From Octopus sinensis (taxonomy: Eukaryota): 64,000 bases of DNA. Shown one piece after another: positions 8,615 to 56,839 of the stretch (position 1 is the stretch's first letter; the number at the start of each line of letters is the position of its first letter). Below the pieces are notes generated by a model. The model did not search any database and was not told where the DNA came from. It saw only the letters and a list, made by a program, of their open reading frames with translations. The DNA lies in assembly GCF_006345805.1 (NCBI RefSeq), contig NW_021831404.1, forward strand, positions 190,149 through 254,148, written 5' to 3'. The translations under genes and the position numbers were made by a program.

Positions 8615-9500
8615 TGCTGAGTGAAATGCTTAGCAGTATTTCTGAGTTCAAATTCTGCTGAGACCGACTTTGATTTTCACCCTTTGTGGTCAATGAAATA
8701 AGTACCAGTCAACTACTGGCGGTCAATGTAATTGACTAGTCACCTCTCCTTAAAATTTCAGGCCTTGTGCCTTTAGTAGAAAGGATGATTATTATTATTA
8801 TTATTAAGGCAGCAAGCTGGCAAGATCGTTAGCATGTCAGGCAAAATGCTTAGTGGCATTTCATGTCTTTATATTATGAGTTCAAATTCTGGCAAGATTG
8901 ACTGACTTTTATTTTTTGAGGGTTAATGAAATAGAACCAGCTGAACACTGCAGTCAGTGTAATTGATTTGCCCACTCCCACAAAACTTCAGGCTTTGTGC
9001 CTATAGTAGAAAGGATGATGATGATTATTATTATATTATTATTATCATTATTATTATTATTATTATTAAGGTGACAAGCTGGCAGAATTGTTTGCACACC
9101 AAGCGAAATGCTTAGCGGTATTTTGTCTGCTGCTACATTCTGAGTTCAAATTCCACTGAAGTCGACTTTGTCTTTCATCCTTTCAAGGTTGATGAAATAA
9201 GTACAAGTTATGCACTTGGCCTTATACCCAAGAGTAGAAATAATTATTATTAAGATGGCAAGCTGGCTGAATCATTAGCGCACCAGGTGAAATGCTTAGT
9301 GGCATTTTGTCCATCTTCACATTCTGAGTTCAAATTCCACCATGGTTAACTTTGCTTTTCATCCTTTTGGGGTCAATAAATTAAGTACCAGTGAAAAACT
9401 GGGATTGATGTAATCGACTTATTCCCTCCCCACAAATTTCAGGCCATGTGCCTACAGTAGAAAGAATTATCATTATTATTATTATTATTATTATTATCAT
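8390..9500 (+). mobile_element. Five head-to-tail copies of SINE family B separated by (ATT)n
   Basis: GGCGGCGAGCTGGCAGAA...GAGTTCAAATTC...GCCTTTCATCCTTTCGGGGTCGATAAA...GGCCTTGTGCC..AGTAGAAAGG(ATT)n. Other copies near 3730, 3988, 4236, 11880, 15668, 25615-26690 and 46320. Confidence 0.85.
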
Positions 9501-11523: not shown

Positions 11524-11628
11524 CTGGATGTAAAGTTGAAGACGCTGCCTTCTTTGTTCCAACACTTTGTGGTTCCATTTTAACATCTTCTTTGGAGGGA
11601 ATTCTGGAGTAGCAATCAGTTTCTTTAG
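11524..11628 (-). CDS. SNX24: SNX22/24-like coding exon 3 (PX domain)
   Basis: ttttgcag|CTA...CAG|gtaatt, 105 nt. Translates LKKLIATPEFPPKKMLKWNHKVLEQRRQRLQLYIQ, with the PX proline loop and the LEQRR..L..Y motif of SNX22/24. Confidence 0.95.
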
Positions 11629-12180
11629 CTGCAAAAGTCAAGTTTACCATTATTTAAGAAATAAGTAACCAAAGTATTCAATAACTGAAATCATTCATCA
11701 TCATCATCGTTTATCGTCCGCTTTCCATGCTAGCATGGGTTGGCCGGTTCGAATGGGGTCTGGGAAGCCAGGAGGCTGCACCATAAAAACTATTATACAT
11801 AAAATGGTGGAAGCAGAGTTCTGGGATCTACATTTTCTCTCATAAATTCGATGATCATCTTCTGATGTCCCTATGTCGTATTTCTTTATTGCCCACAGGG
11901 GGATAAACACAGAGGGGACAAGCAAGGACAGACAAAGGGATTAAGTCGATTACATCGACCCCAGTGCGTAACTGGTATTTAATTTATTGACCCCGAAAGG
12001 ATGAAAGGCAAAGTCGACCTTGGTGGAATTTGAACTCAGAACGTAACAGCAGACGAAATACCTCTAAGCATTTCGCCCAGCTTGCTAATGTTTTTGCCAG
12101 CTTGTCCCAATGTCTTATTTCCAGCACATGACCAGTTCCAGACCACCAATGTCTCCTAAGTGTAAGGAACTATAAAGACA

Positions 12181-12690
12181 TGTTCTGAACTCAAGTGCTT
12201 CAAAGCCAAAGCTAAACTCATGGTGAAGTGTTAGTGCTAAACTCCAGTACTTCAGAATTACTTTTAAACTTCAGTAGTGAAAAGTCAGCACAAACATCAG
12301 TTCTTCAGGATTAGTTCTGAACTCTAGTACTTAAAGGCCAATGCTAAATTTCAGTGCATAACCTCCTAGTTCTGAATTCCACTGTTTAAGGGCCATTTCT
12401 GAACTCCAGTACTTAAGGGCCAAACTTTAACTCCAGTACATAAGACGTAGTTCTGAACTCCAGTACTTAAGGGCCAGTTCTGAACTCCAGTACTTAAGGG
12501 TCAGTTCTGAACTCCAGTACTTAAGGCCCAGTTCTGAACTCCAGTACATAAGGCACACAGTTCTGAATTCCAATACTTAAGGGACAGTTCTGAATTCCAC
12601 TACTTAAGGGCCATTTCTGAACTCTGGTACTTAAGGTCCAGACTTTAACCCCTGTACATAAAGCACACAGTTCTGAATTCCAGTACTTAA
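12181..12690. repeat. 27-bp minisatellite array A (degenerate), unit AGTTCTGAACTCCAGTACTTAAGGGCC
   Basis: About 12 clear units at 12368-12690 plus decayed units back to about 12181. Ends at a TTAA where a piggyBac-like MITE begins. Confidence 0.9.
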
Positions 12691-12912
12691 CCCTTTTGAT
12701 ACAAACCCACTTGAGAACATCTCTGCTTTTATGATACAAGCTCCCTGTTTAAAAGCAATTTAAATTAAAACTTTCCATCGAAATTTCATGTCAATTTTTG
12801 TTCTAAACACCAGCCTAATGATGAAAAAGTCATTTTACTGAATTCTTAATTATTATCGACGTTAAATGAGGCCAAGGCAGCATGTTTCAACAGAAATATG
12901 GTAGCAAAAAGG
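12691..12912. mobile_element. piggyBac-like MITE (second family), inserted at a TTAA of minisatellite A
   Basis: TTAA|CCCTTTTGATAC...; right end degenerate. Homologue with intact right end at 58022-58224. Confidence 0.65.
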
Positions 12913-13093
12913 TAGGAAATAAATTCTCTTAGGATATAATACCGACTTATATTTGGTAGTATTCCTGGAAAATGCGGTAGCTATTCCCCAACTATTAAAT
13001 TCATTAGAGACTAAACTGATTAACATCTAATAGGCCAAGATTTAACAGAAATTTTGAAAAGATAATGACAAGAATAAAGATGTGAATTGTTAC

Positions 13094-13177
13094 CTGTTTG
13101 TGCAGATCTTCAAATTCAGTATAGCGTCTTTCGACCGAATTATATCTTCCAGACATCCATACTTGGACATAAAATAC
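13094..13177 (-). CDS. SNX24: SNX22/24-like coding exon 2 (PX domain RRY motif)
   Basis: tttcatag|GTA...CAG|gtaaca, 84 nt, phase 0-0. Translates VFYVQVWMSGRYNSVERRYTEFEDLHKQ (PX RRYxEF..LH). Confidence 0.95.
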
Positions 13178-13333
13178 CTATGAAATATAATTAATGAAGA
13201 CGGTTTAATCTTTCTTTTCCAGTCACTGAGAGAGAGAAGAAAAAAATACAAATAACAAACTTTCCAACTTATAAACGAGGAAAAAAAAGAAGTGGTTCTC
13301 TCCCTTGAAGTGCATAGATTCTCCCTTCCTTCG

Positions 13334-13375
<42 letters not shown>

Positions 13376-13789
13376 CCATAATAGAACATCCACAATGCAA
13401 CAAACACGTGGATTTAATATAAAGTGCTTCTTTTACAAGCTAAAGTTGTTAGCAATACAGTGTTTCTGGTTTCCATTTTCTATCTAACACGCTAAGTAGC
13501 TCCACGCATGAGTGTGTGTGTGTGTGTGTGTGTTATGTGCGTGTGTCTGTTTATCTCTGTGCAAAGTTCTACATAAAGTACAAACATGCATTTTAAACTC
13601 TTTTCTACTCCAGGCACAAGGCCCAACATTTTTGGGGAGGGGTCCAGTTGATTAGATCGACCCCTCGAAAGGATGAAAGGCAAAGTCGACCTCAGCGGAA
13701 AAACATGCATAAAACTAAAGGCTTGTTCAATAATTTTCAAGAGTACCACACTTGTATTATTCTAACATAACAAAGGAAAGGTTGATAGT

Positions 13790-14115
13790 GACTTCGAAGT
13801 ATGAGCTTACTTGCTGTCATCAGACAGTTCCGATTAACCAACAATGGTTAACTGAAAAGAACCACTTCTCTATGACAGCATCAGACCAAATGTCTTTTAC
13901 ATGGTTCTTCAGAAATTGAACAAATTCAGCTATGAAACCCTACCTCATCAAACTTATCCATCAGATAGACTATTATTTTCCCAAGCATCTCAATAACTTC
14001 CTGCAAAAATAGGTCTTCAACAACCAAACTGCAGCTCAAAATGCCAAATACATTCAAAGAATTCTTCAGTATCAGGATTTCCAGAATTATATTTCACTGG
14101 AATAAATAGATACGT
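13790..14115 (+). mobile_element. Mariner transposase C-terminal remnant
   Basis: LLYDSIRPNV..LQKLNKFSYETLPHQTYPSD, YYFPKHLNNFLQK*VFNNQ, matching mariner HDNARPH...LPHPPYSPD...FKHLDNFL. Confidence 0.8.
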
Positions 14116-14197
14116 GAATGGATTTGGTAGACAGAATATGAAAGAAGTGTGGCACCTAGAGTAAGTACCTTCTACTATAGCCTCAGTTCGACCAAAG

Positions 14198-14722
14198 CTC
14201 TTAAGTATTGGAGTTCAGAACTGGCCCTTAAGTATTGGAGTTCAGAACTGGCCCTTAAGTATCGGAGTTCAGAACTGGCCCTTAAGTATCGGAGTTCAGA
14301 ACTGGCCCTTAAGTATCGGAGTTCAGAACTGGCCCTTAAGTATCGGAGTTCAGAACTGGCCCTTAAGTATCGGCGTTCAGAACTGGCCCTTAAGTATCGG
14401 CGTTCAGAACTGGCCCTTAAGTATCGGCGTTCAGAACTGGCCCTTAAGTATCGGCGTTCAGAACTGGCCCTTAAGTATTGGCGTTCAGAACTGGCCCTTA
14501 AGTATTGGCGTTCAGAATTGGCCCTTAAGTATTGGCGTTCAGAACTGACCCTTAAGTATTGGTGTTCAGAACTGGCCCTTAAGTATTGGTGTTCAGAACT
14601 GGCCCTTAAGTATTGGTGTTCAGAACTGGCCCTTAAGTATTGGAGTTCAGAACTGGCCCTCACGTACTGGAATTCAAAACTGGCCCTCACCTACTGGAGT
14701 TCAGAACTGGCCCTTAAATACT
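14198..14722. repeat. 27-bp minisatellite array B (homogeneous, about 19 units), reverse complement of array A
   Basis: Unit GGCCCTTAAGTAYTGGAGTTCAGAACT with variants. Inserted inside a SINE-A copy whose halves lie at 14149-14197 and 14723-15050. Confidence 0.97.
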
Positions 14723-17700
14723 AGATTTAGTAGATGGAAACTGGAAAGAAGCCTGTCATATATATATATATATATATATTAATATATATATGTGTGTGTG
14801 TCTTTGTGTCTGTTTTTGTCCCCCACCACTGCTTGACAACTGGTGTTGATATGTTTATGTCCCCCGTAACTTAGTGGTCTGGCAAAAGAGACTGACAAAT
14901 TACCAGGCCTGAAAATAGAAAAGCACTGGTGTTGAAAAAAAAAGTCGAGTAAAATAAATATCAGGCTTCAAACAAATTAGTTCAAAGGTTGATTCTTCAA
15001 GGTGGTGCCCCAGCATGGCCACAGTTTACTGACTGAAACAAAAAAAAAAATAAAGATATGCACACACACAGTGTGAAGCATAGAATGGGAAAGTATTACT
15101 ACTTATTTGTAAAAATGTAATACTAAATCAAATATTTAACAGAAAACTTGGAAAAAAAACAAAGGCGGGTAAGAAAAAATATAAGCAAAAATATAACCCG
15201 AAACTTTATCATATTCCACTAATATACATCACAGATGTTAACAGTCAGGGGATAGAATTTCAGTCCAATATTTTTAACGGGATTTAGTTATAAGAGTTTA
15301 ACCGAGTTTCACCATATATGTGGATTGTTATTTTAATTCATATTAGCACTGTCACATGGTTGAAGGTTGGGTCTTTAGAATATGGCACTTGTCACATTCC
15401 AAGCGACAGCGTCTGTTAATAGTTAATTTCCATAATGTGAGCATTCTTGTGAAGGAAGCATAGCTTAGTGGATAGGGTATTTGGCTCGCGATTGTAACAT
15501 TGAGTTCAATATCTAGCACCGCGTTATGTCCTTGAGCAAGACACTTTATTTCATGTTGCTCCAGTCCACTCAGCTGGCAAAATTGAGTAGTACCCATAAT
15601 TCAAAGGGCCAGCCTTGTTACACTGCGTCATGCTGAATCTCCCTGAGAGTTACATTAAGGGTATGTGCGGCGAGCTGGCAGAAACGTCAGCACGTCGGGC
15701 GAAATGCTTAGCGGTATTTCGTCTGCCGTTACGTTGTGAGTTCAAATTCTGCCGAGGTCGACTTTACCTTTCATCCTTTCAGGGTCGATAAATTAAGTAC
15801 CAGTTACGCACTGGGGTCGACGTAATTGACTTAATACCTATGTCTGTCCTTGATTGTCCCCTCTATGTTTAGCCCCTTGTGGGTAATAAAAAAATAGGTA
15901 TGAGTGTCTGTGGAGTACTCAGCCACTTGCACATTAATTTCACAAGCTGGCTGTTCCATTGATCAAATTAACTGGAGTTAGGAAATTTGTTGCATGAAGA
16001 ATATCAAAGATGGAATTTTGCTTCTCTTTGGGTCATCAAATCCAAGATAAGGCAGTCCAAGATACATTTCGCCTGAAAACGCTGACGGGATGGGGTGACT
16101 ATGGTTCAAACTTGATAAGGGACCAAACAAAAACAGAAAAAACGATATTGATGAGACTCAGAGAAAAGATAAGATAAAATAAATAAATAGATAGATAAAG
16201 CACATTGCATTTATAAATTAATCCTTGCATCCTAATTAGCGATTACTTGTTAATTGTATACTGATTGACAATCTGTCAAGGAGTGTGTCTGTGTGTGGTG
16301 TGTGTGCGCATGTGTGTATGTTCAGGTACAGTATGTATGTGGCATGCATTTTGTTTTCGCTAATATATGTAAGTATTTAACCACACACACACACACACTC
16401 ATCATTGGTAGCTTCGGGTGACTCACTAAAGTTGGTCTGATATAATCCTGCCATAACGGTTTTCAATGAACAAGTTTTCCTTCCTAATTAAAATACCTTA
16501 CTTACATTATACGGTTCCAATCACTATAACCTTTGATTAGTCCAACTAATTAGTAATCTCGCTCCTCTTACTCCACGACATATATCTACACCTGCAGACC
16601 ATTATATTGGTCAACAGAGGGCATATGGTTTCACCAGTTGTAAATGGCAACCAGATAAATCTGCCCTCAAAATTCACACCCTATTTGCCACTGCCACTGC
16701 CACCACCACCAATTCTAATTCTTTTTTCGTGTTCTGAGTCCAAATCCTGCCGAGATCAAATGTGCCTTTCACTCTTCCGTGGGTCATGTATAGTGCCATA
16801 TCAAGGTATGGGTAATTAAAAAGAATGATTTAAAAAAGAAAAATTTCCAGTCATGGCTATCCCATCCCGTCCTTGTTTTCACGTCAAGTATCCAGGACTG
16901 AAATGAGACAATTTCGCACAGCTGTCTGGACACTGACATTTTGGTACAACAGAATGGACATTCAGCCTGTTTGGGCAACAGTACTTTTTGGAACCAGAGG
17001 CAAACAACCTGCCCCCACACACACACACGTGTGTTAGCAGAAATATAGACTTACAGATATAAAGGAGAGAGAGATTACAATTTATGAATTGAATATAACT
17101 GACCTTCTTCAATTTCTGCCTACCAGTTTTACTTACAAGATATTGATCAAGTTGCAGCTATAGTATGAAAGCATTAGCCAACATGGCTATGAGTTAACAA
17201 GTTTATTTCCCAACCACATGTTTCCAGGTTCACTCCCAATGTGGGGACTGCAAATTTACCACAAGGGGATTTCTCATGTGGTTTTATGGTGCATATGTGG
17301 TTCACTTGTTTACACCGCTAGTGGGAAACAATTACCGCCTTTCCTGCTGCAAGGACTACCTGATCATGGGATTTCGGCCTTCTTTGGTCTTGTCACTGGT
17401 AGATACCTGACTGTTGGAAACAGTAGTAATTGTCCTGCTGGTGATATACACACTGACAGAGCTCAATCAAGCACTGGTGTTGCTAAAAGCCAGATATAAA
17501 TATATATATGTGTGTATAGTGGCTGTCTGGTAAGTATAGGCGCAGGAGTGGCTGTGAGGTAAGTAGCTTAAGTGTACAGTAGAAGTGTCTTCTACTATAG
17601 CCTTGGGCCGACCAAAGCCTTGTGAGTGGATTTTGTAGACGGAAACTGAAAGAAGCCCATCGTATATATGTATGTACTTGAGTGTATATGTCTGTGTTTG

Positions 17701-18168: not shown

Positions 18169-18703
18169 TGCTTTGACACAGCATAATATTTGTAAACGAG
18201 TGTCACTCTCATCCAGGCAGTGTTGTTTATCTCCAATATTCTTCATAAACATGCTTGGAAAAAGCTGTAGGTTGGCAACTGGAAAGGCATCCAGCCATAG
18301 AAAAAAAAAATCCGTCCAAATAAACCCATCCAACCCATACAAGCATGGAAAAGAGGACGTTAAGCCGATAACGATGATAATGATTGTGATAAATAAACGG
18401 GCAAAACGGAACAAAAATAACCTAGTGATTAATTATGAATACATGCGTTTGCTTAAGAGTAATTTGTCCTGTTTGTTATGATGGTGGCGGTGACAGCTGT
18501 GGTGGTGGAGGTGGTGGTGGTGGTGTAGTGGTAGTAGTTGTTACTGGTGCTGCTGTTAGTTGAAAATTCAGTCCTGATCGAACCAGCCTATGATTAAAAG
18601 TTCTTGCCATGACTACTCAACTTTCTATTCAGACATTGTGTCTCCTGGACTATATTAGTTAAAAAAAGGTCCTTCCTTTCCTTTTGCTAAACATTTGTAA
18701 GTT

Positions 18704-19133
18704 GCTCAACATTAAGCTGCTACTTCTAGTGAGCCTAGAGGCCATACAAAGGCTCTTTCTCTCTCTCTCTCATCAAGTTGTTTAACCAAAGTTAGCCCTG
18801 ACAGAGGAGTCCTATGACAAAAGGCTCTCCAGCCAGGGCAATCTCTACAGCTTTTCTTTTTCTGTTTCAGAAATGCTTATTAAAACCCAACATTATCCAA
18901 TGCACCCTTCATATTTGCTCAACATTAAGCTGCTACTTCTAGTGAGCCTAGAGGCCATACAAAGGCTCTTTCTCTCTCTCTCTCTCTCATCAAGTTGTTT
19001 AACCAAAGTAAGCCCTGACAGAGGAGTCCTATTACAAAAGGCTCTCCAGCCAGGGCAATCTCTACAGCTTTTCTTTTTCTGTTTCAGAAATGCTTATTAA
19101 AACCCAACATTATCCAATGCACCCATCATTTTT
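18704..19133. repeat. Tandem duplication of about 213 bp
   Basis: Second unit starts at 18917; differences are mainly (CT)n length and a few substitutions. Confidence 0.9.
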
Positions 19134-20100
19134 GTTCTAAAGACAAGGTATGACTTAAAGGAGATATAGTTGCTATTTCTAGCAGCTTCAATGGTCACAG
19201 GAAGGTTTCAGAGTTAGCTTGTTTTTTTTTTGTTTTTTTTTTCGTGGTTGCAGAGTTGATGTTATTGGTGTCAGAGCAGATAATGGTTACTCTTTGCCAT
19301 GAGATCTGTTATTACTATCCAGCATATGACACAGTAATTTTGAGTTATCCTACAAACTAATTGGCGTTTGTTAAGGGCCTTAAGTTCAAATTGCTTTCTC
19401 TATTCTTTTCTCTTTTTTTCTCTGCCCTCTGCTATTTTTAATTTATTCTTATTCCGAGTCTATTTTTCTCTTCTCTTTTATTTGTTACAAGTCATGAGAC
19501 TGCGGCCAAGCTGTGGCACCATCTTGAAGAGCTTTTAGTCCAACAAATCGACCCTAGAATTTTTTTTTTTTTTTTAAAGCCTGGCATTTATTCTATTGGT
19601 GTATTTTTGCTGTGCTGCTAAGTTACAGGGCTATACACAAACCAACACCAGATTCCAAATAGTTTTGATGGGGCGGAGGACAAACAGGCACAATAACACA
19701 GGCGTGCGCACACACACACACACACACACGATGGGCTTCTTTCAGTTTCTGCATACCAAATCCATATACACACACACACACACACGCGTGTGTGTAAATA
19801 TGTCACGGAGTAATTAATCAAACACTAACCTCATTAAGTCATAATATTATCATACAAATGAAGCAAAACAACTGCGTTTAAATAAAGTATGGGATGGTCA
19901 CAGCTGCAACATTTCTGATCACAGACCTGCTCAATCAATCCCGACCTAGGGTTAAACAACTTAAACAACAACTGTAACAAGACACTGGGACATGAAATCA
20001 TTGCAGTGTATGCCAATGACAAGGATGTAATAATTAAACTACGTGATTGTAATTGAAGTCGGCACATAGAGGAATGCGATAAGCCCTCATTTCCCTTTAT

Positions 20101-21589: not shown

Positions 21590-23100
21590 ACCATATGTCA
21601 GGGTGTCGAGGAAAAAAATTCCCCAAGCTTTGTCCCGGACAGAATTAATAACGGAATTGTAAGCGAACTTAGTTGTGGAAGGAGCTTTGGCTCATTCTCC
21701 GCTATGTACTGGGCAAGCTAGTCAACATTATAAGATGTCTCACGCAGCAAATCCGAAGACAGTGTGTTTGCACCTTCCTGGTTTGTTGAAGGTAGGCCAT
21801 ACACTGCCAACGCACTACCGCCCATATTGAGAACAGTATCTTCGATTTCAAGTAGCGCCCTGTTGTAGATAAGGTCACTGTACCCAACCTCCGTTGATGG
21901 ATTTAGCAACTGAGCCTGACGCAGGAAATCTTCAGACATGTAATCTTTGTAGGTAAGCCATAAAGAGGCGGGATCACCCAAGTCGGAGCATTGGAGTAGA
22001 ATAGCGAAAAGCAATCTTAGTCTTTTAGGGAATTTTAACAAAACGCCCTCTGCCATAGTGGCGCCCCATTGTGAATCATCCTCGAAAAGTCCACGCCTGA
22101 AGCAGGCTTCCCGGAAAGTGTCACATAATTCACCGTCAACAGTTCTTATGTCTCGAAAGCTTTGTGGGTGGAAAACGTCATGGAGGAGAAGGTGCAGGTG
22201 AAGACGCTCATGCTGGTTGGGAGGTACAGTGTACACTCTTCGTAGACAACTGTTAAACTTGACACCGGGATGTCCTTGAACATCCTGACCTGACTTCCTA
22301 CACACCCAAGTGTTCTTTGACCACACATATTAGGACAGGACCTGAGGGTATAAAAGTGTTTTGGAAAAATGTGTCAAGTTGGCAAAGCCTAAAGAAACCA
22401 GTCAAAGTTGTTTCTTTTGGACTGGCTGCCAATTGTGCAGCAGTCTGTTCAGTAAAGTAAGCCCACTGGCCGTTTTCCAAATGAACCGCTAGTTGTATTA
22501 TGGTGGGGTGCCTTTGGTGAAGTGGAAACCCGAATATCTGCCGAAAAGCTTCACCACTGCTGATATATCAACCTAGCAAGTACTGCGACACCTCATCCAT
22601 GCTATTGTCCTTTTGAAGGCTGAGCATGGCAGCATGAGTACCCTTGTTAACATATTTACATATGTACTTTATTGATTTTATTGAATGACAGAACTCCAGA
22701 TTTATATGACCGTTGAAAATTTTCATCAGAAATGGACAGTATGGGACCACCCATCTATTATCAAGTTGATGACCCCTTAACATCATAGTGAATCCCCCAT
22801 TCTCAGGCCGCATTCATCTGTACAGTGGATATCCATCGCCAGGCCCGCATGGACTATGCACCATGTGTGCCTTCACAATGTCGTACTGGGATTTCTGCTG
22901 TGATGATGTCATCTAGAACTGTAGGGTCTATTTTGGTGACCAACCAAACCAAAATGTGTGCATGTGGCAACCCTGTCTTCTGCCACTCAACAGTATACAT
23001 GTGGCAGTTGACAGGCCCAAAAACCTGCCCTTTTTTTATTAAATCAATTAGCTTAGCCAGCTTCTGCCTGAAAACCCTGGCAATAATATCATGCTGACGG
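21590..23100 (-). mobile_element. Decayed autonomous Helitron, Rep/helicase fragment
   Basis: Minus-strand frames give ARVFRQKL, EWQKTGLPHAHIL (HUH motif), DNRWVVPY...HINLEFCHSIKSIKYICKYVNKG (tyrosine motif), TFREACFRRGLFEDD and GIFFLDTP (start of helicase motif I). Frameshifts, stops and an internal deletion are present. Confidence 0.95.
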
Positions 23101-24815
23101 CAGCAAAGGGTGAAAGTTACATGTACAGAGAACTCGTCTTGGAAAGTATGCGTAAAATTGAAGGGGGGAAAGGGTGATAAGAAATGGCAAATAAATAAAC
23201 TGACAGGTATTTGTATGTATGTATGTATGTATTAGTGTGTTTTCATCATTGTTTAACATCCGTTTTCCATGCTAGCATAGGTTGGACGGTTCGACTGGGG
23301 TCTGGGAAGCCGGGAGGCTGCACCAGGCCCAGTCTGATCTGGCAGTGTTTCTACAGCTGGATGCCCTTCCTAACGCCAACCACTCCGTGAGTGTAGTGTG
23401 TGCTTTTTACGTGCTAGGCGAGGCTGGCAACGGCCATGATCGGTTGGTGCTTTTTACGTGCCACCGGCATGGAGGCCAGTGGAGACAGCACTGGCAACGG
23501 CCACGTTCGGATGGTTCTTTTATGTGCCACCGGCACGATTTCGATTTCATTTGCCTCAACAGGTCTTCGCAAGCAGAGTTTTGTCTCCCAAGAAGGAAAG
23601 GTATGCATAAGTGGTCTGGCTACATCCCAGGTAAAGGCCACGGGTTATGGCCTCACTTGTCCTGCCGGGTCTTCTCATGCACAGCAAACTTCCAAAGGTC
23701 TCGGTCACTAGTCACTATTGTCTGTATATATATATGTATGGTAGTAAGTAAATGTGTTTTAAAAAAGATTTGTTAAAAATTCAGTTTGTAGGGAATAAAT
23801 ATTTGTCAATTGTATTTGAAAAAGATTGGCAGTTATTTGTATGTATGTGTGTGTATTCTCTCTCTATACATATATTACTCTTTTACTTGTTTCAGTCATT
23901 TGACTGTAGCCATGCGGGAGCACCACCTTTAGTCAAGCATGTCGATTGCAGGACTTATTCTTTATAAGACTAGTACTTATTTTATCGGTCTCTTTTGCCA
24001 AACAGCTAAGTTACAGGGACATAAACACACCAGCATCGGTTGTTAAGCGATGTTGGGGAGACAAACACAGACACACACATACATATATACGACGGGCTTC
24101 TTTCAGTTTCCGTTTACCAAATTTACTCACAAGGCTTTGGTCGGTCCGAGGCTATAGTAGAAGACACTTGCCCAAGGTGCCACGCAGTGGGACTGAACCC
24201 GGAACCATGTGGTTGGTAAGCAAGCTACTTACCACACAGCTGCACCTGCACCATATATATATATATATAATATATATATATATATATAATATATATATAT
24301 ATTATATATATATATATATATATAATGTTGATGCAAACAGAAAAAACAGAACTCAAAATATGAGTATATGTATATTTTTATTAATATTTAGTAGAAACAA
24401 CAGAGTGACTCAAAGTTTGAGAGTTTCGTGTGTCGGCACTCACCAGTTTGATAAGGACACATAAATATAAATACATACATCCATATAGACAGACAGATAT
24501 GCTGATGCTTATCAGTTTCATAAGCACTAACTGATAAATGCCAATACACGAAACTCACTTCCCTTGAGTCACCCTGTTGCTTCTGATAAATATTAATAAA
24601 AATACACACACACACACATACATATGTATCCTTAGCATCAGGCTTGCATGGCTCAGCCAAAGTCTGTTGTGGGTAGATTTTTTCTGGGACTGAATGTTCT
24701 CCCTTGTTACCAAGCAAGGTAATATTTTCCCCAGTCTTTCAAACGTGAACCACACAACGCCCAGACATGTTTTCACAAGAGATTACCATACTAAAATCAC
24801 CACTTATAATAATAA

Positions 24816-25608: not shown

Positions 25609-25928
25609 ATTATTTATGTCTTTATTGCCCACAGGGGGGGTTAAACATAGAGGGGACAAACAAGGAGAGACAGAGGGATTAAGTGGATTACAGTGACCCC
25701 AGTGCATAACAGGTACTTATTTAATCGACCCTGAAAGGATGAAAGGCAAAGTCAACCTAGGCAGAATTTGAACTCAGAACGTAACGGAACTTGAACTCAA
25801 GAGTGCCAACAATAGTCTTTATAGATCAATCAATTAAAGAAACATTAACTAATTAACTAGTTAATAATTAATATCAAGGACACTGTACATCCAAGGCTGA
25901 TGCAACTACATGATGTACATTTATTGCA

Positions 25929-25960
<32 letters not shown>

Positions 25961-26734
25961 GTGATAATAATAATCGTTTCTACTATAGGCACAAGGCCTG
26001 AAATTTTAGGGAGAGGGATAGTCGATTACATTGACCCCAGTGTTTCACTGGTACTTAATTTATTGACCCCCAAAAGGATAAAAGGCAAAATTGACCTCGG
26101 CGGAATTTGAACTCAGAACGTAGCAGCAGGTAAAATACCGCTAAACATTTCACCCTGAGTGCTAACGATTCTGCCAGCTCGCCGCCTTAATAGTAATGAT
26201 AATAATGAATGAAAGAATAAATAAGAATAAAGATGGTTTTTCAATTACATAAAAGTTGTCTTCATTCTTATTCATTTATAATAACAATCCATTCTACTAT
26301 AGGCACAAGGCCTGAAATCTGGGGGGAGAGGGGGTCAGTCGAATGGATTGGTCCCAGTACACAACTGATACTTAATTTATCGACCCCGAAAGGATGAAAG
26401 GCAAAGTCGACCTGGACGGAATTTGAACTCAGAACGTAAAGACTGACAAAATACTTATTTCTTTACTACCCACAAGGGGCTAAACACAGTGGGGACAAAC
26501 AAGGACAGACAAACGGATTAAGTCAATCATGTCGACCCCAGTACATAACTGGTACTTAATTTATCGACCCCGAAAGGATGAAAGGCAAAGTCAACCTCGG
26601 CGGAATTTGAACTCAGAACGTAAAGACAGACGAAATACCGCTAAGCATTTCACCTGGTGTGCTGACGATTCTGCCAGCTCACCACCTTAGTGATAATAAT
26701 GATAAAAATAATAATAATAATAATGATGATGATA

Positions 26735-27966: not shown

Positions 27967-29815
27967 TACATACACACATACATATACACACATATGTATA
28001 TATATTTATGTGCGTATGTGTGTCTTTGTCCCCCACCCCCGCCCATCGCTTGACGACTGATGCGGGAGTTTTCATGTCCCTGTAACTTAGCAGTTCAGCA
28101 AAACAGACCAATAGAACAAGTACTAGGATTACAAAGAATAAGTCCCGGGGTTGATTTCTTCAACTAAAACCCTTTAAGATGGTGCTCCAGCATGGCCACA
28201 GTCAAATAACTGCAACAAGTAAAAGAATAAGAGAACATAGAGGTGTGTGTGTGTGTGTGTGGTGTGTGTGTGTGTGTGTAGGTGTCTTTGTGTCTGTATT
28301 TGTCCTTCTACCACGACTTGGCAACAGATGCTGGTGTGTTTGCATCCCAGTAATTTAGCAGTATGGCAAAAGAGATCAATAGACTAAAGTCCAAGCTTAA
28401 AAACAAGCAAGTATTGGGGGTCAAATTCATTCAACTAAAAATTCTTCAAGATGGTACCCAGCAAGGGTACCATCTGAAATAAATAAAAGAGAGGGAAAAA
28501 ATAAAAAAAGATAATTAAGCTGGCATTTGGGACATAATCATTTGTACTTTATGCACAAGGCCAGCAATTTAATGGGACCAGGGAAAGATGATTACATCAA
28601 CTCCAGTATTTGGTTGGTATTTTGTTTTATCAACCTTGAAAAGGAGAAAGGCAAAGTTGACCTTGGTGAAATTTGAACTCAAAACATACATTACCAGAAG
28701 AAATACATTTTAACCAGCATACTCTCTTTCTCTTTACTCTTTTACTTGTTTCAGTCATTTGACTGTGGCCATGCTGGAGCACTGCCTTTAGTCGAGGAAA
28801 CTGACCCCAGGACTTATTCTTTGTAAGCCTAGTACTTATTCTATCGATCTCTTTTGCCAAACTGCTAAGTTACAGGGATGTAAACATACTAGCATCGGTT
28901 GTCAAGCAATGTGGGGGGGGGTCAAGCACAGACACACAAACACACACACATATATATACATATACATATATATGACAGGCTTCTTTCAGTTTCCGTCTAC
29001 CAAATCCACTCACAAGGCTTTGGTCGGCCCGAGGCTATAGTAGAAGACACTTGCCCAAGGTGCCATGCAGTGGGACTGAACCCGGAAACATGTGGTTGGT
29101 AAGCAAGCTACTTACCACACAGCCACTCCTGTGCCTATGGTAATTATTCTGCCAACTTGCTGTCTTTGGAACATAACTGACATGGAATTTTAATGGAAAG
29201 TGTTAATTTCAAATAAGCTAATTCTGAAATCTCTGTAAGAGATGAATGCAGTAGCCATACCGGCAAGTAATGTTTGTTGTCACTTCAACATGGCTGTACT
29301 ATATGAATGAATATTACTGTGATTTTTTTACCCCAAGAGGACATTTTCCCCTAATCGGTTAATGATACACACCTGCATCTGATATAGTGCAAATAGGGGA
29401 GTGAACTCCTACCACCTTCTAGCAGTGGGACCAGTAGACCAGCTGATATCAGGCCATTTTCTACCCATCTTCAGTACTGGACACCTCGTTAAAAAAATCA
29501 AGTAATGTCCGTTCGAACGGAACAGCTATGTTCTAGTGGCAACAAACATTACTTGCCAGTGTTAATTTCATTTGCTTTTAAACAGGAAGCTGGCATCATA
29601 CAACCAGGGACAGTCTCAGACCATTTGGTATCAAAAGCGTCGACAGTGGAGGTACCATATTTTCCAGCATACAAATTGAATTCTGTAGACCAAAATTTAC
29701 TGCCAAAAAAGGTAGGTCAACTTATACACCAAGACGACTTCAGATGACCAAAACAGAGGATATACAGGAGAATTTGGAATGATAGCAATGATGTTTGAAT
29801 GTTTACACTATATAC

Positions 29816-31500: not shown

Positions 31501-32297
31501 AGGCTCCTGAAAGTAAAGGGGAAATATATATGTATGGAAAGAGAGAGAGAGAGGCGAATACTCTGCAGAATAGACACCTCTTAAAAATTGGACAAAAAAA
31601 ACTGTAGTTTTTTAGGTTTTTTTTTTTTTTTCATTACAGGGTTTGCCTTGCTTTTTATCATTCTGATCTCGATTAAATTAAGTACTAGTAAAATAACGAA
31701 TCGAATTAATCACTAGGCTTCGCAAGTCACCAAAAGAAGCCATCAGGGCAGACAGAAGAGCCAACTTCACTGAGTTCATGACCGAAATCAAACTCGATGA
31801 CTGGCATCCGTGCAAGTGGAGCGCTAAGAGTACCATCCGAGTGTGATCATTGCCAGAGCAGCAAACTGGCTTCCATGCCGGTGGCACGGGAAAAGCACCA
31901 TTCAAGTGTGATCGTTACCAGCGCCGCCTTACTGGCACTTGTGCCGGTGCCACGTGAAAAAACATTCGAGCGAGGTCGTTGCCAGTGCCGCTGGACTGGC
32001 TCCTGTGCAGGTGACATGTAAAAAACACCACTTGAGCGTGGCCGTTGCCAGTACTGCCTGACTGGCCCTCGTGCCAGGGGCACGTAAAAAGCACCCACTA
32101 CACGCTCGGAGTGGTTGGCGTTAGGAAGGACATCCAGCTGTAGAAACTCTGCTAGATCAGATTGGAGCCCGGTGCCGCCATCTGGTTCGCCGTCCTCACT
32201 CAAATCGTCCAACCCATGCTAGCATGGAAAGCGGACGTTAAACGATGATGATGATGATGTAATTGCGTAACAAGCAGAAACATATGAGAAGGTTTAC

Positions 32298-32700
32298 AGT
32301 GGCTGTGTGGTAAGTAGCTTGCTAACCAACCACATGGTTCCGGGTTCAGTCCCACTGCGTGGCATCTTGGGCAAGTGTCTTCTGCTATAGCCCCAGGCCG
32401 ACCAATGCCTTGTGAGTGAATTTGGTAGACGGAAACTGAAAGAAGCCTGTCGTATATATGTATATATATATATATGTGTGCGTTTGTGTGTCTGTGTTTG
32501 TCCCCCTAGCATTGCTTGACAACCGATGCTGGTGTGTTTACGTCCCCGTCACTTAGCGGTTCGGCAAAAGAGATCGACAGAATAAGTACTGGGCTTACAA
32601 AGAATAAGTCCCGGGGTCGATTTGCTCGACTAAAGGCGGTGTTCCAGCATGGCCGCAGTCAAATGACTGAAACAAGTAAAAGAGTAAAAGAGTAAAGAGT
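32298..32700 (+). mobile_element. SINE family A, well-preserved copy
   Basis: Complete head, microsatellite, body and (GTAAAAGA)n tail. Confidence 0.9.
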
Positions 32701-33686
32701 AAGTGGTAGCTTTAAAATGACAGCGTTATGTACCGTATACATCGTAATATTCTCCTTTACACTGATGCATACATAACGCTTTATTTGTAAGGTTGTCAAC
32801 AGACAAGGAGGAACCATAGCGAGCTTAAGTCAGTGTTGAAAGCACAATTATTCTAAGTCAGTCAGTGACAGTTTTCTTCAGATATGAATGGACAGCTGTC
32901 ACATTATATATACCGCATAAACCAAACCTAACCCTGTTACAAGCCGACTCCTAATCTGTGGCCAGGAAATACGGAATTTTTCAAGTACTTCCAATAAAAG
33001 TTAACCCTAGATTTTTAGGTCTCTTTTAACATATATATTACCAAATCTAGTGTATCATTACATGTCGAACTTGACCCACACTTTCTAGCATCTTAAGTGC
33101 AGGCACACTTTTCTGCTACCATAATCCAAAGACAGAAGAACGAAGGAAAAGTTTTCGATTAGCCGACCTTCTGGAACGTATCACCACATGTTGCCAGAAC
33201 AAATTAGCCACGATAATGATTTATTAATGAGAGACTTTTCAGCAGGACGTTATCTTTAGATGCATACAATCACATGTAAATAACCATAAATCTTCGTTTT
33301 ATAATGATTTATACGTATATTAGAATTAAGCTTCTGCTAATCAAAATTTCAAACAAAATTAAACATGAATTTTTAATTTCCTGAAAAAGTGGTATCCCGA
33401 TATCCACATAAAAGTAGGCCCCTTAAATTCAGCCTTAGAAAATGGTCCGAAAAGTTCAACTTTTACTGGGATATATATATATATATCTTTACTCTCTTTT
33501 ACTCGTTTCAGTCATTTGACTGTGGCCATGCTGGAGCAGCGCCTTTAGTCGAGCAAATCGATCCCAGGGCTTATTCTTTGTAAGCCCAGTACTTATTCTA
33601 TCGATCTCTTTTGCCGAACCGCTAAGTTACGGAGACGTAAACACACCAGCATCGGTTGTCAAGCGATGTTGGGGGTACAAACACAG

Positions 33687-36309: not shown

Positions 36310-36372
36310 CGTGTAGCTTCTGTCATTTTCACCTTCAACTTTACGAAAACTGGGAATTGAAACTCGTATCAT
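36310..36372 (-). CDS. SNX24: SNX22/24-like coding exon 1 (start codon)
   Basis: ATG at 36372-36370 with an in-frame TGA upstream. Translates MIRVSIPSFRKVEGENDRSYT then donor gtaaat; matches the V.IPSFR...R.YT N-terminus of SNX22/24 and is in phase 0 with exon 2. Confidence 0.9.
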
Positions 36373-42184: not shown

Positions 42185-42729
42185 ATATAATGTGGGTGTC
42201 CTTTGTCACTTCCTCACAGAAAAAGGCCATCTCTTCCGTTATCAAACGTGCAATCATGAGATCTCATGTGACTAGCAAGTTTGACTTCAGACAAGCAGAC
42301 TCCGCTGCACAATACTCTCTTTTACTCTTTTAATAGTTTCAGTCATTTGACTGTGGCCATGCTGAAGCACCACCTTTAGTCGAGCAAATCGACCCCAGGA
42401 CTTATTCTTTGGAAGTCTAGTACTTATCCTATCGGTCTCTTTTTGCCGACTCGCTAAGTTACGGGGACGTAAACACACCAGCATCGGTTGTCAAGCGATG
42501 TTGGGGGACAAACACAGACACACAAACATATACACACACATACATACATATATACGACGGGCTTCTTTCAGTTTCCGTCTACCAAATTCACTGACAAGGC
42601 TTTGGTCAGCCCGAGGCTATAGTAGAAGACACTTGCCCAAGGTGCCACGTAGTGGGACTGAACCCTGAACCATGTGGTCGGTAAGCAAGCTACTTGCCAC
42701 ACAGCCACTCCTCAAGCAGAAAAGACTTA

Positions 42730-51032: not shown

Positions 51033-52261
51033 GTAAGTATTAAAAATACATTGAATTGGCAAGACTTATTTTTTGTATTTCCTTATTTTGGCCCGTATTC
51101 TTTTAGTCACACATTTGATAGTGAGTAGATCTATTCCGAAAGTGCTCCCTCCGTGACCATCTGGTTGGTAGCAGTGATCGAGTTTCATTAATAACAAGCG
51201 CCCGCATATCTCCATCTTCCTTCCTTCTTTCCTTCCTCCATCCATCCACCCATACATACAGACACATACACACACATACATAGACTTTTTCTATTCCTGA
51301 GCGTTATACTAATACATCTGTTTGTTTTGTACACCACCTGTCTCCGTCTTTTGTTTTTTTTCGTAAACTCTCCCTATACATACATACATACATACATACA
51401 TAGATGAATACATACATACATACATTCGTACATACATACATTCATACATCATACATACATCATACATACATACATCATACATACATACATCATACATACA
51501 TACATCATACATACATACATCATACATACATACATCATACATACATACATACATACATACATACACACATACAGAGAGACACATACCTACATACGTCTTC
51601 TGCTATAGTGCTGGGTCAACCAATTCCTTGTGAGTAGACGGAAACTGGAAGTTCGTTGTGTGTGTGTGTGCGTACAGTACGTGCAGGCATGTGTTTCGTT
51701 GCACCCATGAACTTGACAACTGGTGTTGTTTTGTTTACGTCCCCATAATCTCGCAGGTCGACAAAACCGACTGATAGCACCAAAAAATTAAAAAAAAAAG
51801 GCCCGCAAGCCCATATGTAAAAAAAAAAGGAGTTTTTTACGGAAATCGACGGAAAGGTCTACTAGAAACGAAAGATTGCCAAAAGGCCCTTAAAAGGAAT
51901 AAGTACAGGGATCGATTTGATCGATAGAATAAGTACTAGGCTGACAAAGAATAAGTCGTGGGGCCGATGTGCTCGACTAAAGGTGGTACTCCAGCATGGC
52001 CACAGTCAAATGACTGAAACAAGTAAAAGTTAGTAAAGAGTATAGTCTAAAGATGTAACTCTTGTGAATCTGAAGACTTCTCGTAAGGTTGTATGATATT
52101 TTTTTTTGTAAAGTATTAACCCTTTTGATACCAACCTGCCTGAGACCAACCCTGGTTCTGTGAAACAATTTCACTGCTTTAAATTGATTTAATTTAGTAT
52201 CTGCCATCAGAATTTTGTGCTACTTTATGTTCTGAGCACCAGCTTAACCCTTTAACATTCT

Positions 52262-53250
52262 GATATATGAAAGACAGAGTAAAAGGTAGACTGAATGACG
52301 TATGTGTACGAACAGCCATGCTACATGGCAGTGAAGCATGGGCTGTGACTGCTGAGGACATGCGTAAGCTCGCAAGGAATGAAGCCAGTATGCTCCGATG
52401 GATGTGTAATGCCAGTGTGCATACTTGACAGAGTGTAAGTACCTTGAGAGAAAAGTTGGACCTAAGAAGCATCAGATGTGGTGTGCAAGGGAGACGACTG
52501 CACTGGTATGGCCATGTGGCGAGAATGGATGAGGATAGCTGTATGAAAAAGTGTCACATCCTAACAGTTGATGGAAGACCTGGGATGAGGTGGTGAAACA
52601 TGACCTTCGAACATTAGGCCTCACCGAGGCAATGACTAGTGACCGAGACCTTTGGAAATATGCAGTGCGTGAGAAGACCCGGCAAGCCAAGTGATTTCAT
52701 AACACATGGCCTATGCCAGGGGTGTAACCAGCCCACTTATGCATACCTTTCCTTCCTTGGACACTAAACTCTGCTTGTGAAGACCTGTTGAGCCAAGTGA
52801 AATCGAAATCAAATCAAATTCGCTAATTTGATGACTGGCACCCATGCCAGTGGAGCACTAAGAGCACCATCCGAGCATGATTGCTGCCTGAGCAGGTCAC
52901 TGATCATTACCAGTGTCGCCTTAGTGGCACTTGTGCCTGTGGCATGTGAAAAAACATTCGAGCGAGGTTGTTTCCAGTGCTGCTGGACTGGTTCCTGTGC
53001 AGGTGACATGTAAAAAGCACCACTTGAACGTGGCCACTGCCAGTACCACCTGACTGGCCCTCGTGCTGGTGGCATGTAAAAGCACCCATTACACTCTCAG
53101 AATGGTTGGCATTAGGAAGGGCATCCAGCTGGAGAAACTCTGCCAGATCAGATTGGAGCCTGGTGCAGCCATCTGGTTCGCCAGTCCTCACTCAAATCGT
53201 CCAACCCATGCTAACATGGAAAGCAGACGTTAAACGTTGATGATGATGAT
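52262..53250 (+). mobile_element. RTE-clade LINE 3' fragment
   Basis: Homologous to 6660-7490, including the WDEVVKHDL segment and (GAT)n tail. Confidence 0.85.
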
Positions 53251-55642: not shown

Positions 55643-56839
55643 ATGGAAAATGAATTGTGTGAGACCCAGGTTATTTATAAAACGCATTCCAAAAGGACCG
55701 AATTTCCTGATGAGATTCTGAAACAGATAGGAAAAACATCATACTACTGTGATATCTGTAAAAAGTCATTCTCTAAAAAAAGTAACCTAACACGACATGA
55801 ACGTATTCATACAGGGGAGAAGCCATATCATTGTGATATCTGTGGTAAATCATTCTCTCAAAATAGTGTCTTGACTACTCACATACGTATTCATACAGGA
55901 GAGAAGCCATATCATTGTGATATCTGTGGTAAATCATTCTCTGAAAGTGGTAACTTAACTACTCATAAACACGTTCATACGGAAGAGAAACTGTATCACT
56001 GTGATATCTGTGGTAAATCTTTCTCTACAGTTGGTAATCTAGCTACTCACAAACATATTCATACAGAAGAGAAACCATATCACTGTGATATATATAGTAA
56101 GTTATTCTCTGAAAGTAGTAAAGTAACTACTCGTAAGCATATTCATGCTGGAGAGAAGCCATATCACTGTGATATCTGTGGTAAATCATTCTCTACGTCG
56201 TTTCTGTCAACTTCTCACAAACGTATTCATACAGGAGAGAAGCCATATCACTGCGATATCTGTGGCAAATCATTCTCCATAGGTAGTAATTTAACTATTC
56301 ATAAACGTATTCATACAGGAGAGAAACCATATCACTGTGATATCTGTGGTAAATCATTCTCTCAAAGTAGTGTCTTAACCACTCACATACGTATTCATAC
56401 AGGGGAAAGGCCGTATCACTGTGACATTTGTGGAAAATCATTCTCTGTTACATGCAGCTTAACTAAACACATACGAATTCACACAGGAGAGAGGCCATAT
56501 CACTGTGATATCTGTGGTAAATCATTCTCCATAGATAGCCATTTAACAACTCACAAACGTATTCATACAGGAGAGAAGCCATATCTCTGCGATATCTGTG
56601 GTAAAACATTCTCTCGAAGAAGTTACTTGAATTCTCACAAATGCATTCATGCAAGCAATAAACCATTTCTTTGTGATATCTGTGATATTTCATTCTCTCA
56701 AAAGGGCGAGTTAACTTCTCACAAACATACTCACACAGGAGGTAAACCATACCTCTGTGATATCTGTGATAAGTCATTTTCTGGGAAAGGTGGTTTAACT
56801 CGACACAAACTCATCCATATGGAAGAGAAGCAGTGCTAA
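55643..56839 (+). CDS. Tandem C2H2 zinc-finger protein, 398 aa, 13 fingers (finger 5 degenerate); no KRAB/BTB/SCAN domain seen
   Basis: Repeated [11 protein letters not shown]......HxRIH with TGEKP linkers. Uninterrupted ORF, candidate acceptors at 54957 and 55633/55636, AATAAA at 57230. Style matches the expanded octopus C2H2 family (established knowledge). Confidence 0.97.

What the first reader, a model, noticed from the sequence alone, without database searches (positions are those of the whole stretch)
12181..14722. Inverted 27-bp minisatellite arrays bracket the in-frame-skippable PX exon of SNX24
Seen: array A (intron 2, 12181-12690) and array B (intron 1, 14198-14722) are reverse complements of about 500 bp each, 1.5 kb apart. 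I saw no copy elsewhere in the window, and the only exon between them is the 84-nt phase 0-0 exon encoding RRYTEF. Inference: in pre-mRNA they can pair in many registers into a long dsRNA that loops out exon 2. Flanking inverted repeats are known to promote exon skipping, back-splicing and ADAR editing, and coleoids edit heavily. This could be a length-tunable satellite switch producing a lipid-binding-dead SNX isoform or a circRNA.
Basis: partly seen in the sequence, partly recalled or inferred. Interest (0 to 1): 0.75.

Follow-up and report, generated by a model that had tools for sequence, protein, structure and literature searches.

The report
Inverted minisatellite arrays flanking SNX24 exon
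Two roughly 500-bp blocks of one 27-bp tandem repeat sit in opposite orientation on either side of a small, ancient exon of an octopus sorting-nexin gene; they could pair as RNA, but nothing here shows they regulate splicing, and inverted repeat pairs around exons are common in this genome.

Summary
Array A (12181-12692, degenerate) and array B (14196-14723, 19 units, 96% alike) are reverse complements. They lie 1.5 kb apart and have no other copy in the window. They flank the 84-nt, phase 0-0 exon 2 (13094-13177, minus strand) of an SNX24-like PX-domain gene of Octopus vulgaris.

As pre-mRNA, the two arrays are predicted to form about 310 imperfect base pairs, in many registers.

Four findings argue against a dedicated switch:
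- Array B is a young insertion inside an ordinary SINE copy. Array A is old and bounded by other mobile elements.
- A second inverted pair, made of SINEs, also brackets exon 2.
- 17% of the window lies inside some inverted pair with a spacer of 2 kb or less, and 54% at 5 kb or less.
- An 84-nt exon is a poor substrate for circularisation, and octopus circRNAs are few.

My best reading is a neutral by-product of repeat turnover whose likeliest molecular consequence is intronic A-to-I editing.

I could not test genome-wide abundance of the unit, the same locus in other species, or RNA evidence.

The parts
12181..12692 (+). Array A: about 19 units of the 27-bp minisatellite (consensus AGTTCTGAACTCCAGTACTTAAGGGCC on the + strand). 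It is old and degenerate, with 3- and 4-unit higher-order periods. It lies in intron 2, about 400 nt downstream of the exon 2 5' splice site in the transcript.
14196..14723 (-). Array B: 19 units plus one partial unit of the same minisatellite, with the consensus on the minus strand. Units are 96% alike, with variants in blocks of 3-4 adjacent units. It lies in intron 1, about 1,020 nt upstream of the exon 2 3' splice site.
13094..13177 (-). Exon 2 of the SNX24-like gene: 84 nt, phase 0-0, encoding VFYVQVWMSGRYNSVERRYTEFEDLHKQ, the N-terminal part of the PX domain. The same 84-nt exon with the same boundaries exists in a chiton.
36310..36372 (-). Exon 1 coding part (MIRVSIPSFRKVEGENDRSYT), ending in phase 0 at a gt donor.
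11524..11628 (-). Exon 3 (LKKLIATPEFPPKKMLKWNHKVLEQRRQRLQLYIQ): 105 nt, phase 0-0.
14149..14198 (+). Left part of the SINE-1 copy that hosts array B (consensus positions 80-129, 84% identity).
14724..15059 (+). Right part of the same SINE-1 copy (consensus positions 140-296 and 352-407). Other copies of the family are contiguous across the point where array B sits.
11879..12106 (.). SINE-2 copy abutting the outer side of array A. It is the downstream arm of a second inverted pair around exon 2.
15673..15896 (.). SINE-2 copy in the opposite orientation: 88% identical over 224 nt to 11879-12102, with 206 bp predicted to pair with it in the 4.1-kb fold.
12691..12913 (+). MITE-like repeat starting CCCTTTTGATAC directly after the TTAA of the last unit of array A. 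There are four other copies in the window. It marks the inner end of array A.

Best explanation
These are two arrays of one 27-bp minisatellite family. They lie in opposite orientation in the two introns that flank the ancient 84-nt PX exon of an SNX24-like gene in Octopus vulgaris (assembly GCA_951406725.2, record OX597828.1). They are most likely a neutral product of repeat turnover in a very repeat-rich genome. Array A is the older array: it is degenerate, has higher-order periodicity, and is bounded by a SINE and a TTAA-flanked MITE-like element. Array B arrived later. It interrupts a SINE-1 copy, replaces about 10 nt of it without a target-site duplication, and then grew by local duplications into blocks of near-identical units. 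I infer that B was seeded by a templated copy from nearby array A during break repair, rather than by an independent insertion from a dispersed family. I hold this only at about 60:40. In the pre-mRNA (minus strand), the two arrays can form a long, imperfect duplex in many registers: about 310 bp, longest perfect helix 22 bp, enclosing a loop of about 1.5 kb that holds exon 2. The likeliest consequence is that the duplex is an ADAR substrate and gets clustered A-to-I editing, like other intronic hairpins in octopus. I expect little or no regulated effect on exon 2 inclusion. The anatomy, the SINE context and the pairing energy are shown. The order of events, the editing and the lack of function are inferred.
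For: The exon is conserved with identical boundaries in the chiton Liolophura, so it predates the arrays. B lies inside a SINE-1 copy whose two halves are collinear with the consensus, and seven other copies are contiguous at that point. The unit is not significantly similar to the replaced SINE segment. The flanks immediately next to A and B share no homology, so no common transposon carries them. Co-folding gives -551.6 kcal/mol against -155.4 and -151.1 for the arrays alone, with 310 intermolecular bp. Shuffled A gains only about -6 kcal/mol. The pairing survives in a 4.1-kb fold. It comprises 41 helices (longest 22 bp) holding 167 adenosines, and pairs in many registers. On background: 17%, 28%, 54% and 96% of window positions lie between the arms of an inverted pair with a spacer of at most 2, 3, 5 and 10 kb, and all three exons are bracketed within 10 kb. 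O. vulgaris is 66% repeats, 11.6% SINEs (PMC13282606). Most octopus editing is in introns and 3'UTRs, where hairpins lie, and circRNAs are scarce (PMC9699675).
Against: No copy of the unit occurs in the other 61 kb of the window. Two arrays placed at random in about 67 kb would lie within 2 kb of each other only about 6% of the time, so the pairing is not simply background density. Within the window the arrays are each other's only partner, which favours pairing across the exon over pairing within an intron. Both arrays are about 19 units long. Exon 2 is exactly the exon whose in-frame loss would remove the phosphoinositide-binding motif. Neutrality is a default, not a result. I had no RNA data, no population data and no orthologous locus.
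Confidence: 0.6

Rival explanations
1. One reading: the inverted arrays are a functional RNA switch. Their pairing loops out exon 2 and drives regulated skipping (a PX-dead SNX24 isoform) or back-splicing (a circRNA). The output is tuned by array length and by ADAR editing.
For: There is strong predicted pairing in many registers with no competing partner in the window. The exon is in frame and carries RRYTEF. Inverted intronic repeats are known to promote circularisation and can shift exons to alternative splicing (PMC4201285, PMC2533698).
Against: B is young and lies inside a SINE, and A is decayed. The arrays are about 1,020 and 400 nt from the splice sites, whereas the RABL5 effect needed the repeat within tens of nucleotides. 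The exon is 84 nt, and exons of 400 nt or less circularised poorly. Not every inverted pair supports circularisation. Octopus circRNAs are few, and ADAR is reported to antagonise them. Inverted pairs bracket much of this window anyway.
Confidence: 0.08
2. Chance juxtaposition: the 27-bp unit belongs to an abundant dispersed satellite or repeat-borne family of the octopus genome, and A and B are two independent arrivals that happen to be close and inverted. The molecular consequences would be the same as in the best explanation.
For: The genome is 66% repeats. B is demonstrably a secondary insertion into a SINE. No flanking homology links A and B. The orientation is a coin toss.
Against: There is no other copy in about 64 kb outside the pair. 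Proximity within 2 kb has a chance of about 6% for two random placements in this stretch. No open reading frame made of this repeat occurs among about 15 billion predicted proteins, though that is a weak proxy.
Confidence: 0.25
3. A Foldback-type transposon: the two arrays are the long terminal inverted repeats, built of short tandem repeats, of one mobile element.
For: The overall form matches Drosophila FB elements (my own knowledge): inverted arms made of tandem short repeats around a central loop.
Against: The loop contains an exon with mollusc-wide conserved boundaries, in the correct orientation for the gene. The arms differ greatly in age and homogeneity. B sits within a SINE with about 10 nt of target lost and no duplication. 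The outer flanks show no matching duplication. No other copy is in the window.
Confidence: 0.03
4. Assembly artefact: a fold-back or chimeric read produced a false inverted duplication.
For: Long-read assemblies can contain palindromic artefacts (my own knowledge).
Against: The arms are only about 83% complementary and differ in internal structure. The 1.5 kb between them is unique, non-palindromic sequence holding a correctly oriented exon, and each arm has its own distinct flanks.
Confidence: 0.02

Closest known systems
Inverted intronic Alu pairs (IRAlus, or reverse-complementary matches) flanking exons in primates
   Same: Both are repeats in opposite orientation in the two introns flanking an exon, predicted to form about 300 bp of imperfect dsRNA. 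They would be expected to be ADAR substrates and could influence back-splicing or exon inclusion (PMC4201285, PMC2533698).
   Different: Here the arms are tandem minisatellite arrays rather than single SINE copies, so they can pair in many registers and probably vary in length. The enclosed exon is only 84 nt. No editing, skipping or circRNA has been shown. A conventional SINE pair of this kind (11879-12102 with 15673-15896) is also present around the same exon.
Foldback (FB) transposons of Drosophila
   Same: Both have long inverted arms composed of short tandem repeats around a central segment.
   Different: The central segment here is host intron plus a conserved exon. The arms are of unequal age. 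There is no target-site duplication and no other copies were seen, so this is not a member.
Intronic minisatellites (VNTRs) that act as splicing or expression modifiers
   Same: Both are head-to-tail arrays of a unit of tens of bases inside introns. Array B has the homogeneity typical of a length-variable locus.
   Different: Known cases act as single arrays, through bound factors or spacing. A complementary pair of arrays across an exon is not a described class, as far as I know.
Competing long-range intronic RNA pairing that selects exons (Dscam docking/selector sites, 14-3-3 zeta, FGFR2)
   Same: Both involve intronic base pairing across exons with several alternative partners or registers.
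   Different: Those elements are short, conserved and positioned next to the regulated exons. These are long, fast-evolving repeats far from the splice sites.

Membership tests
SNX24-like PX-domain sorting nexin (host gene) | PX domain detected above the curated threshold | tested here: met
   The translation of exons 1-3 scores 50.1 bits against PF00787 (cut-off 21.6).
SNX24-like PX-domain sorting nexin (host gene) | Closest named relatives are SNX24 | tested here: met
   The best hits are 'Sorting nexin-24' of a spider and 'sorting nexin-24-like' of a chiton, at 57-70% identity. tblastn with them recovers the same three exons.
SNX24-like PX-domain sorting nexin (host gene) | Conserved R-R-Y-x-E-F phosphoinositide-binding motif, encoded in exon 2 | tested here: met
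   VERRYTEFEDL lies in 13094-13177. Its role in lipid binding rests on established knowledge of PX domains and was not tested here.
SNX24-like PX-domain sorting nexin (host gene) | Full-length protein including the C-terminal part | not testable with these tools
   Only exons 1-3 were detected in the window. No octopus SNX24 protein was returned by the protein search.
Exon-flanking reverse-complementary intronic repeats that drive back-splicing or skipping | Repeats of one family in opposite orientation in the upstream and downstream introns | tested here: met
Exon-flanking reverse-complementary intronic repeats that drive back-splicing or skipping | Pairing across the exon is favoured over pairing within one intron | tested here: met
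   The unit has no other copy in the window, which holds all of intron 1 and intron 2. A-B pairing of 310 bp is kept in the 4.1-kb minimum-energy fold. This is thermodynamic prediction only.
Exon-flanking reverse-complementary intronic repeats that drive back-splicing or skipping | Enclosed exon(s) long enough to circularise efficiently | tested here: not met
   Exon 2 is 84 nt. In the ZKSCAN1 system, exons of 400 nt or less circularised poorly or not at all (PMC4201285). A circle of more than one exon would need a different repeat pair.
Exon-flanking reverse-complementary intronic repeats that drive back-splicing or skipping | Back-splice or exon-skipping junction reads | not testable with these tools
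   No RNA-seq access. SNX24 is not mentioned in the supplements of the octopus transcriptome paper.
Exon-flanking reverse-complementary intronic repeats that drive back-splicing or skipping | Clustered A-to-I editing over both arms as proof of pairing in vivo | not testable with these tools
   This needs RNA reads. The predicted duplex holds 167 adenosines.
Foldback transposon | Inverted terminal arms built of short tandem repeats | tested here: met
   (form only)
Foldback transposon | Target-site duplication at the outer ends, with an interior that belongs to the element | tested here: not met
   The outer flanks do not match. B replaces about 10 nt of a SINE without duplication. The interior holds an exon conserved in a chiton.
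Foldback transposon | Multiple copies in the genome | not testable with these tools
   There are none in the 64 kb window plus 2.8 kb. No searchable octopus genome collection was available.
Minisatellite / VNTR | Head-to-tail array of a 10-100 bp unit | tested here: met
   The unit is 27 bp, with 13.8 copies in the clear part of A (about 19 by unit parsing) and 19.2 copies in B.
Minisatellite / VNTR | Copy-number variation between individuals | not testable with these tools
   Only one assembly holds the locus.

The most novel reading that the evidence does not exclude
An inverted pair of minisatellite arrays acts as a multi-register RNA clamp around the PX exon of SNX24. Because array B varies in length and the duplex can be edited, exon 2 inclusion (and hence the ratio of lipid-binding to lipid-blind SNX24), or a back-spliced product, would vary with allele length, temperature or ADAR activity. 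This would be a heritable, fast-evolving splicing rheostat built from satellite DNA.
Probability: 0.05. Interest if true: 0.65.

Novelty: new member of a known kind. Interest (0 to 1): 0.22.

Why it matters
If the arrays did control exon 2, this would be a clear case of satellite length variation tuning an isoform choice through RNA pairing, in an animal known for heavy RNA editing. As it stands, the locus mainly shows how repeat-rich octopus introns routinely create long complementary segments around exons. It is also a convenient natural test locus: it has one exclusive array pair and one ordinary SINE pair around the same small exon, so public total-RNA data could show which intronic duplexes actually form and get edited.

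Tried and rejected
(1) In-situ origin of the unit from the SINE-1 segment it replaces. The junctions suggested microhomology, but local and semi-global alignments of the unit to the SINE consensus were no better than shuffles (about 12% and 49% of shuffles scored at least as well). I rejected it as not shown.

(2) A large palindromic duplication comprising SINE-2 plus array on each side. The SINE-2 pair is 88% identical, no more alike than other SINE-2 pairs at 86-89%, and the spacings are asymmetric. Rejected.

(3) Mirror collinearity of unit variants between A and B, which would indicate a whole-array inverted copy. The outer edge of B pairs best with the middle of A (pair I25). There is no support.

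(4) Genome-wide abundance of the unit. Exact-pattern scans of viral and metagenome contigs found nothing, and neither collection holds octopus DNA. As a proxy, I searched the array's translated frames against the protein collections. The word-indexed search found nothing. The full phmmer scan found only unrelated 9-residue repeats. The array's open reading frame is not a called gene. This is uninformative about abundance.

(5) Sampling more octopus DNA through paralogues of the zinc-finger gene.

(6) An orthologous octopus SNX24 locus. No octopus SNX24 protein is in the searchable collection, so none could be fetched.

(7) Coding potential of the arrays. Three frames are open in B, and one (LSIGVQNWP) is invariant across the variant units. 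However, the variable sites are 3 nt apart, one unit carries a stop, and there are no homologues. I treat this as chance.

(8) Rfam scan of the window at gathering thresholds: no family matched.

(9) My guess that the open reading frame at 21718-22326 is Helitron-like: no Pfam match, so I dropped it.
Full report
**Source and gene.** The window comes from the chromosome-level assembly of Octopus vulgaris (GCA_951406725.2, record OX597828.1, near 19.4 Mb, reversed). This was shown by an exact look-up of the zinc-finger protein encoded at 55643-56839. The gene around the finding is on the minus strand. tblastn with a human SNX24 sequence that I recalled from memory (a lead only), and then with spider and chiton SNX24 proteins returned by the protein search, recovers three exons. 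Reading the splice sites gives:
- exon 1 coding part, 36372..36310 (ATG...ACG|gt);
- exon 2, 13177..13094 (ag|GTATTT...AAACAG|gtaac; 84 nt);
- exon 3, 11628..11524 (cag|CTAAAG...TCCAG|gtaat; 105 nt).

All junctions are in phase 0. The 84-residue translation matches the Pfam PX domain at 50.1 bits. Without exon 2 the score is 24.1 bits and the first 29 matched profile positions (3-31) are lost. Exon 2 encodes VERRYTEFEDL. In the chiton Liolophura sinensis the homologous exon is also 84 nt, with the same first and last codons (VF...HKQ) and the same ag|...|gt boundaries. The exon is therefore old, and whatever lies in its flanking introns in octopus arrived later.

**The observation.** Tandem Repeats Finder reports a 27-nt array at 12313-12690 (13.8 copies, 74% matches, with 83- and 110-nt higher-order periods). 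It reports another at 14200-14717 (19.2 copies, 96% matches). The two consensus units are reverse complements apart from one base. Parsing unit by unit gives about 14 clear and 5 degenerate units for A (12182-12692), and 19 units plus a partial one for B (14196-14723). In B, the variants at two positions of the unit (TCCAAT, TCCGAT, GCCGAT, GCCAAT, ACCAAT) lie in runs of 2-4 adjacent units. The two outermost units carry the CCAGTA variant that is the consensus of A. This is the pattern of recent stepwise duplication. Inverted arms of up to 186 nt are 81-86% complementary in a ladder of registers. The unit matches 26 times at 3 mismatches or fewer, only in the two arrays, with none expected by shuffling. 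A word-7 search finds nothing else in the window or in the 2.8 kb beyond it.

**Context of each array.** Array B interrupts a copy of a roughly 400-nt SINE, here called SINE-1, that gives about 30 matches in this window. Positions 14149-14198 match consensus positions 80-129, and 14724-14895 match positions 140-296. The tail of the SINE follows at 14999-15054. Seven other copies in the window are contiguous across that point. About 10 nt of the SINE (CTTGTGAGTG) are replaced, and there is no target-site duplication. The unit is not detectably derived from the replaced segment. B therefore entered, or was copied into, an existing SINE copy and then expanded.

Array A abuts a copy of a second SINE family (SINE-2, 11879-12106) on its outer side. 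On its inner side it ends at the TTAA of its last unit. A MITE-like repeat starts there with CCCTTTTGATAC and has four other copies in the window. The sequences immediately next to A and B share no homology, so there is no sign of a common transposon carrying the arrays.

**What the RNA could do.** Folding the transcript strand gives -155.4 kcal/mol for B alone and -151.1 for A alone. Both values are ordinary for their composition (z = -0.9 and -2.1). Together they fold to -551.6 kcal/mol with 310 intermolecular base pairs, a gain of -245 kcal/mol. Shuffled versions of A gain about -6. The duplex consists of 41 helices; the longest has 22 uninterrupted pairs, and the duplex holds 167 adenosines. 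A five-unit probe from B pairs at -150 to -187 kcal/mol across most of the well-preserved part of A. In a minimum-energy fold of 4.1 kb (11850-15950), the A-B pairing is kept in full. The loop is about 1.5 kb, with B ending about 1,020 nt upstream of the 3' splice site and A starting about 400 nt downstream of the 5' splice site.

**Why I do not read it as a switch.**
1. The arrangement is not unusual for this genome. A second inverted pair, two SINE-2 copies 88% identical over 224 nt, also brackets exon 2 and pairs with 206 bp in the same fold. That pair is no more alike than other SINE-2 pairs, so it represents two independent insertions.
2. Counting all inverted pairs of at least 100 nt and 78% identity, 17% of window positions lie between arms 2 kb or less apart. 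The figures are 28% at 3 kb or less, 54% at 5 kb or less, and 96% at 10 kb or less. Exons 1 and 3 are bracketed as well. O. vulgaris is annotated as 66% repeats, 11.6% SINEs (PMC13282606).
3. The histories of the two arrays differ. One is decayed and one is freshly expanded inside a SINE, which is not what a maintained complementary pair would look like.
4. Published tests of the mechanism set conditions that are not met here. In the ZKSCAN1 system, exons of 400 nt or less circularised poorly or not at all, and not every inverted pair supported circularisation (PMC4201285). In the RABL5 case, the effect of paired Alus on the neighbouring exon disappeared once they were moved more than about 68 nt from it (PMC2533698).
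5. In O. vulgaris itself, circRNAs are few (296 of high quality). Alternative splicing rates are unremarkable. A-to-I editing is concentrated in introns and 3'UTRs, where hairpins lie (PMC9699675).

The most likely fate of an A-B duplex is therefore clustered intronic editing, not regulated exon choice.

**What keeps the question open.** The two arrays are the only copies of their family in about 67 kb. Two random placements in that length would fall within 2 kb of each other only about 6% of the time. I therefore think a local origin is more likely than two independent arrivals, for example B seeded by a templated inverted copy of A at a break in the SINE. This is inference.

The decisive data could not be reached, namely the number of arrays of this unit in the genome and the state of the orthologous introns in other octopods. 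The DNA collections on hand hold no cephalopod sequence. The protein collection returned no octopus SNX24. My attempt to sample octopus DNA through zinc-finger paralogues returned no cephalopod proteins. Searching the array's translated frames as a proxy found no related open reading frames among the predicted proteins. That result says little either way.

**Verdict.** The functional part is untested and has a low prior. I file the locus as an ordinary example of a known kind, exon-flanking inverted intronic repeats. Its uncommon detail is that the arms are minisatellite arrays. A direct test with public RNA-seq and a genome-wide BLAST would settle the question quickly.

Noticed in passing
window 55643-56839 (+): An intact single-exon open reading frame of 398 aa with about 12 C2H2 zinc fingers (84-nt DNA periodicity in Tandem Repeats Finder). 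It is a called gene in the public assembly. The closest proteins returned were non-cephalopod (mostly vertebrate) KRAB-type zinc-finger proteins at about 50-58% identity.
   Followed up: partly
window, whole; e.g. 28700-29150, 32285-32715, 42300-42725, 58865-59290: A roughly 400-nt SINE (here called SINE-1; consensus built) gives about 30 matches in both orientations in 64 kb. That is on the order of a fifth of the window, and it is the main source of inverted pairs.
   Followed up: partly
window 14114-14147: A 34-nt piece matching SINE-1 positions 133-166 sits directly upstream of the piece matching positions 80-129. The host SINE of array B therefore already carried an internal duplication or a second fragment before or alongside the array.
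   Followed up: partly
window 25615-26679 and 9059-9427: Clusters of several SINE-2 copies lie head to tail: four copies at 25.6-26.7 kb, and a 184-nt-period dimer at 9.06-9.39 kb.
   Followed up: no
window 12691-12913; also 52112-52247, 29558-29640, 56928-57085, 58018-58225: A MITE-like repeat of about 220 nt begins CCCTTTTGATACC and ends ...AAAAGGG, next to TTAA. This suggests a piggyBac-type target. Each 27-bp unit contains a TTAA, and this element sits at the TTAA of the last unit of array A.
   Followed up: partly
window 14196-14723, + strand frame giving LSIGVQNWP: All common unit variants of array B are synonymous in one open frame (the peptide LSIGVQNWP is unchanged across 17 units). 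The variable sites are 3 nt apart, one unit has a stop, and no homologous protein exists, so this is probably chance.
   Followed up: partly
window 18702-19134: A 217-nt segment is duplicated in tandem (2.0 copies, 96% matches).
   Followed up: no
window 31847-32212 (-), 23282-23776 (+), about 53012-53140, about 60162-60224: Another repeat family has an internal 66-nt tandem repeat (31876-32095) and similar pseudo-ORFs (…FLQLDxLPNANHSxSVVxAF…). It is present in several copies on both strands.
   Followed up: no
window 13334-13371 and 13512-13551: (TC)19 and (GT)n microsatellites lie in intron 1 between exon 2 and array B, within the loop that the arrays would enclose.
   Followed up: no
locus L002 1-309 and 3001-7296 (Liolophura sinensis): The chiton has two adjacent PX-domain gene calls with nearly identical C-terminal exons, about 3 kb apart. 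This suggests a tandem duplication of its SNX24-like gene.
   Followed up: no
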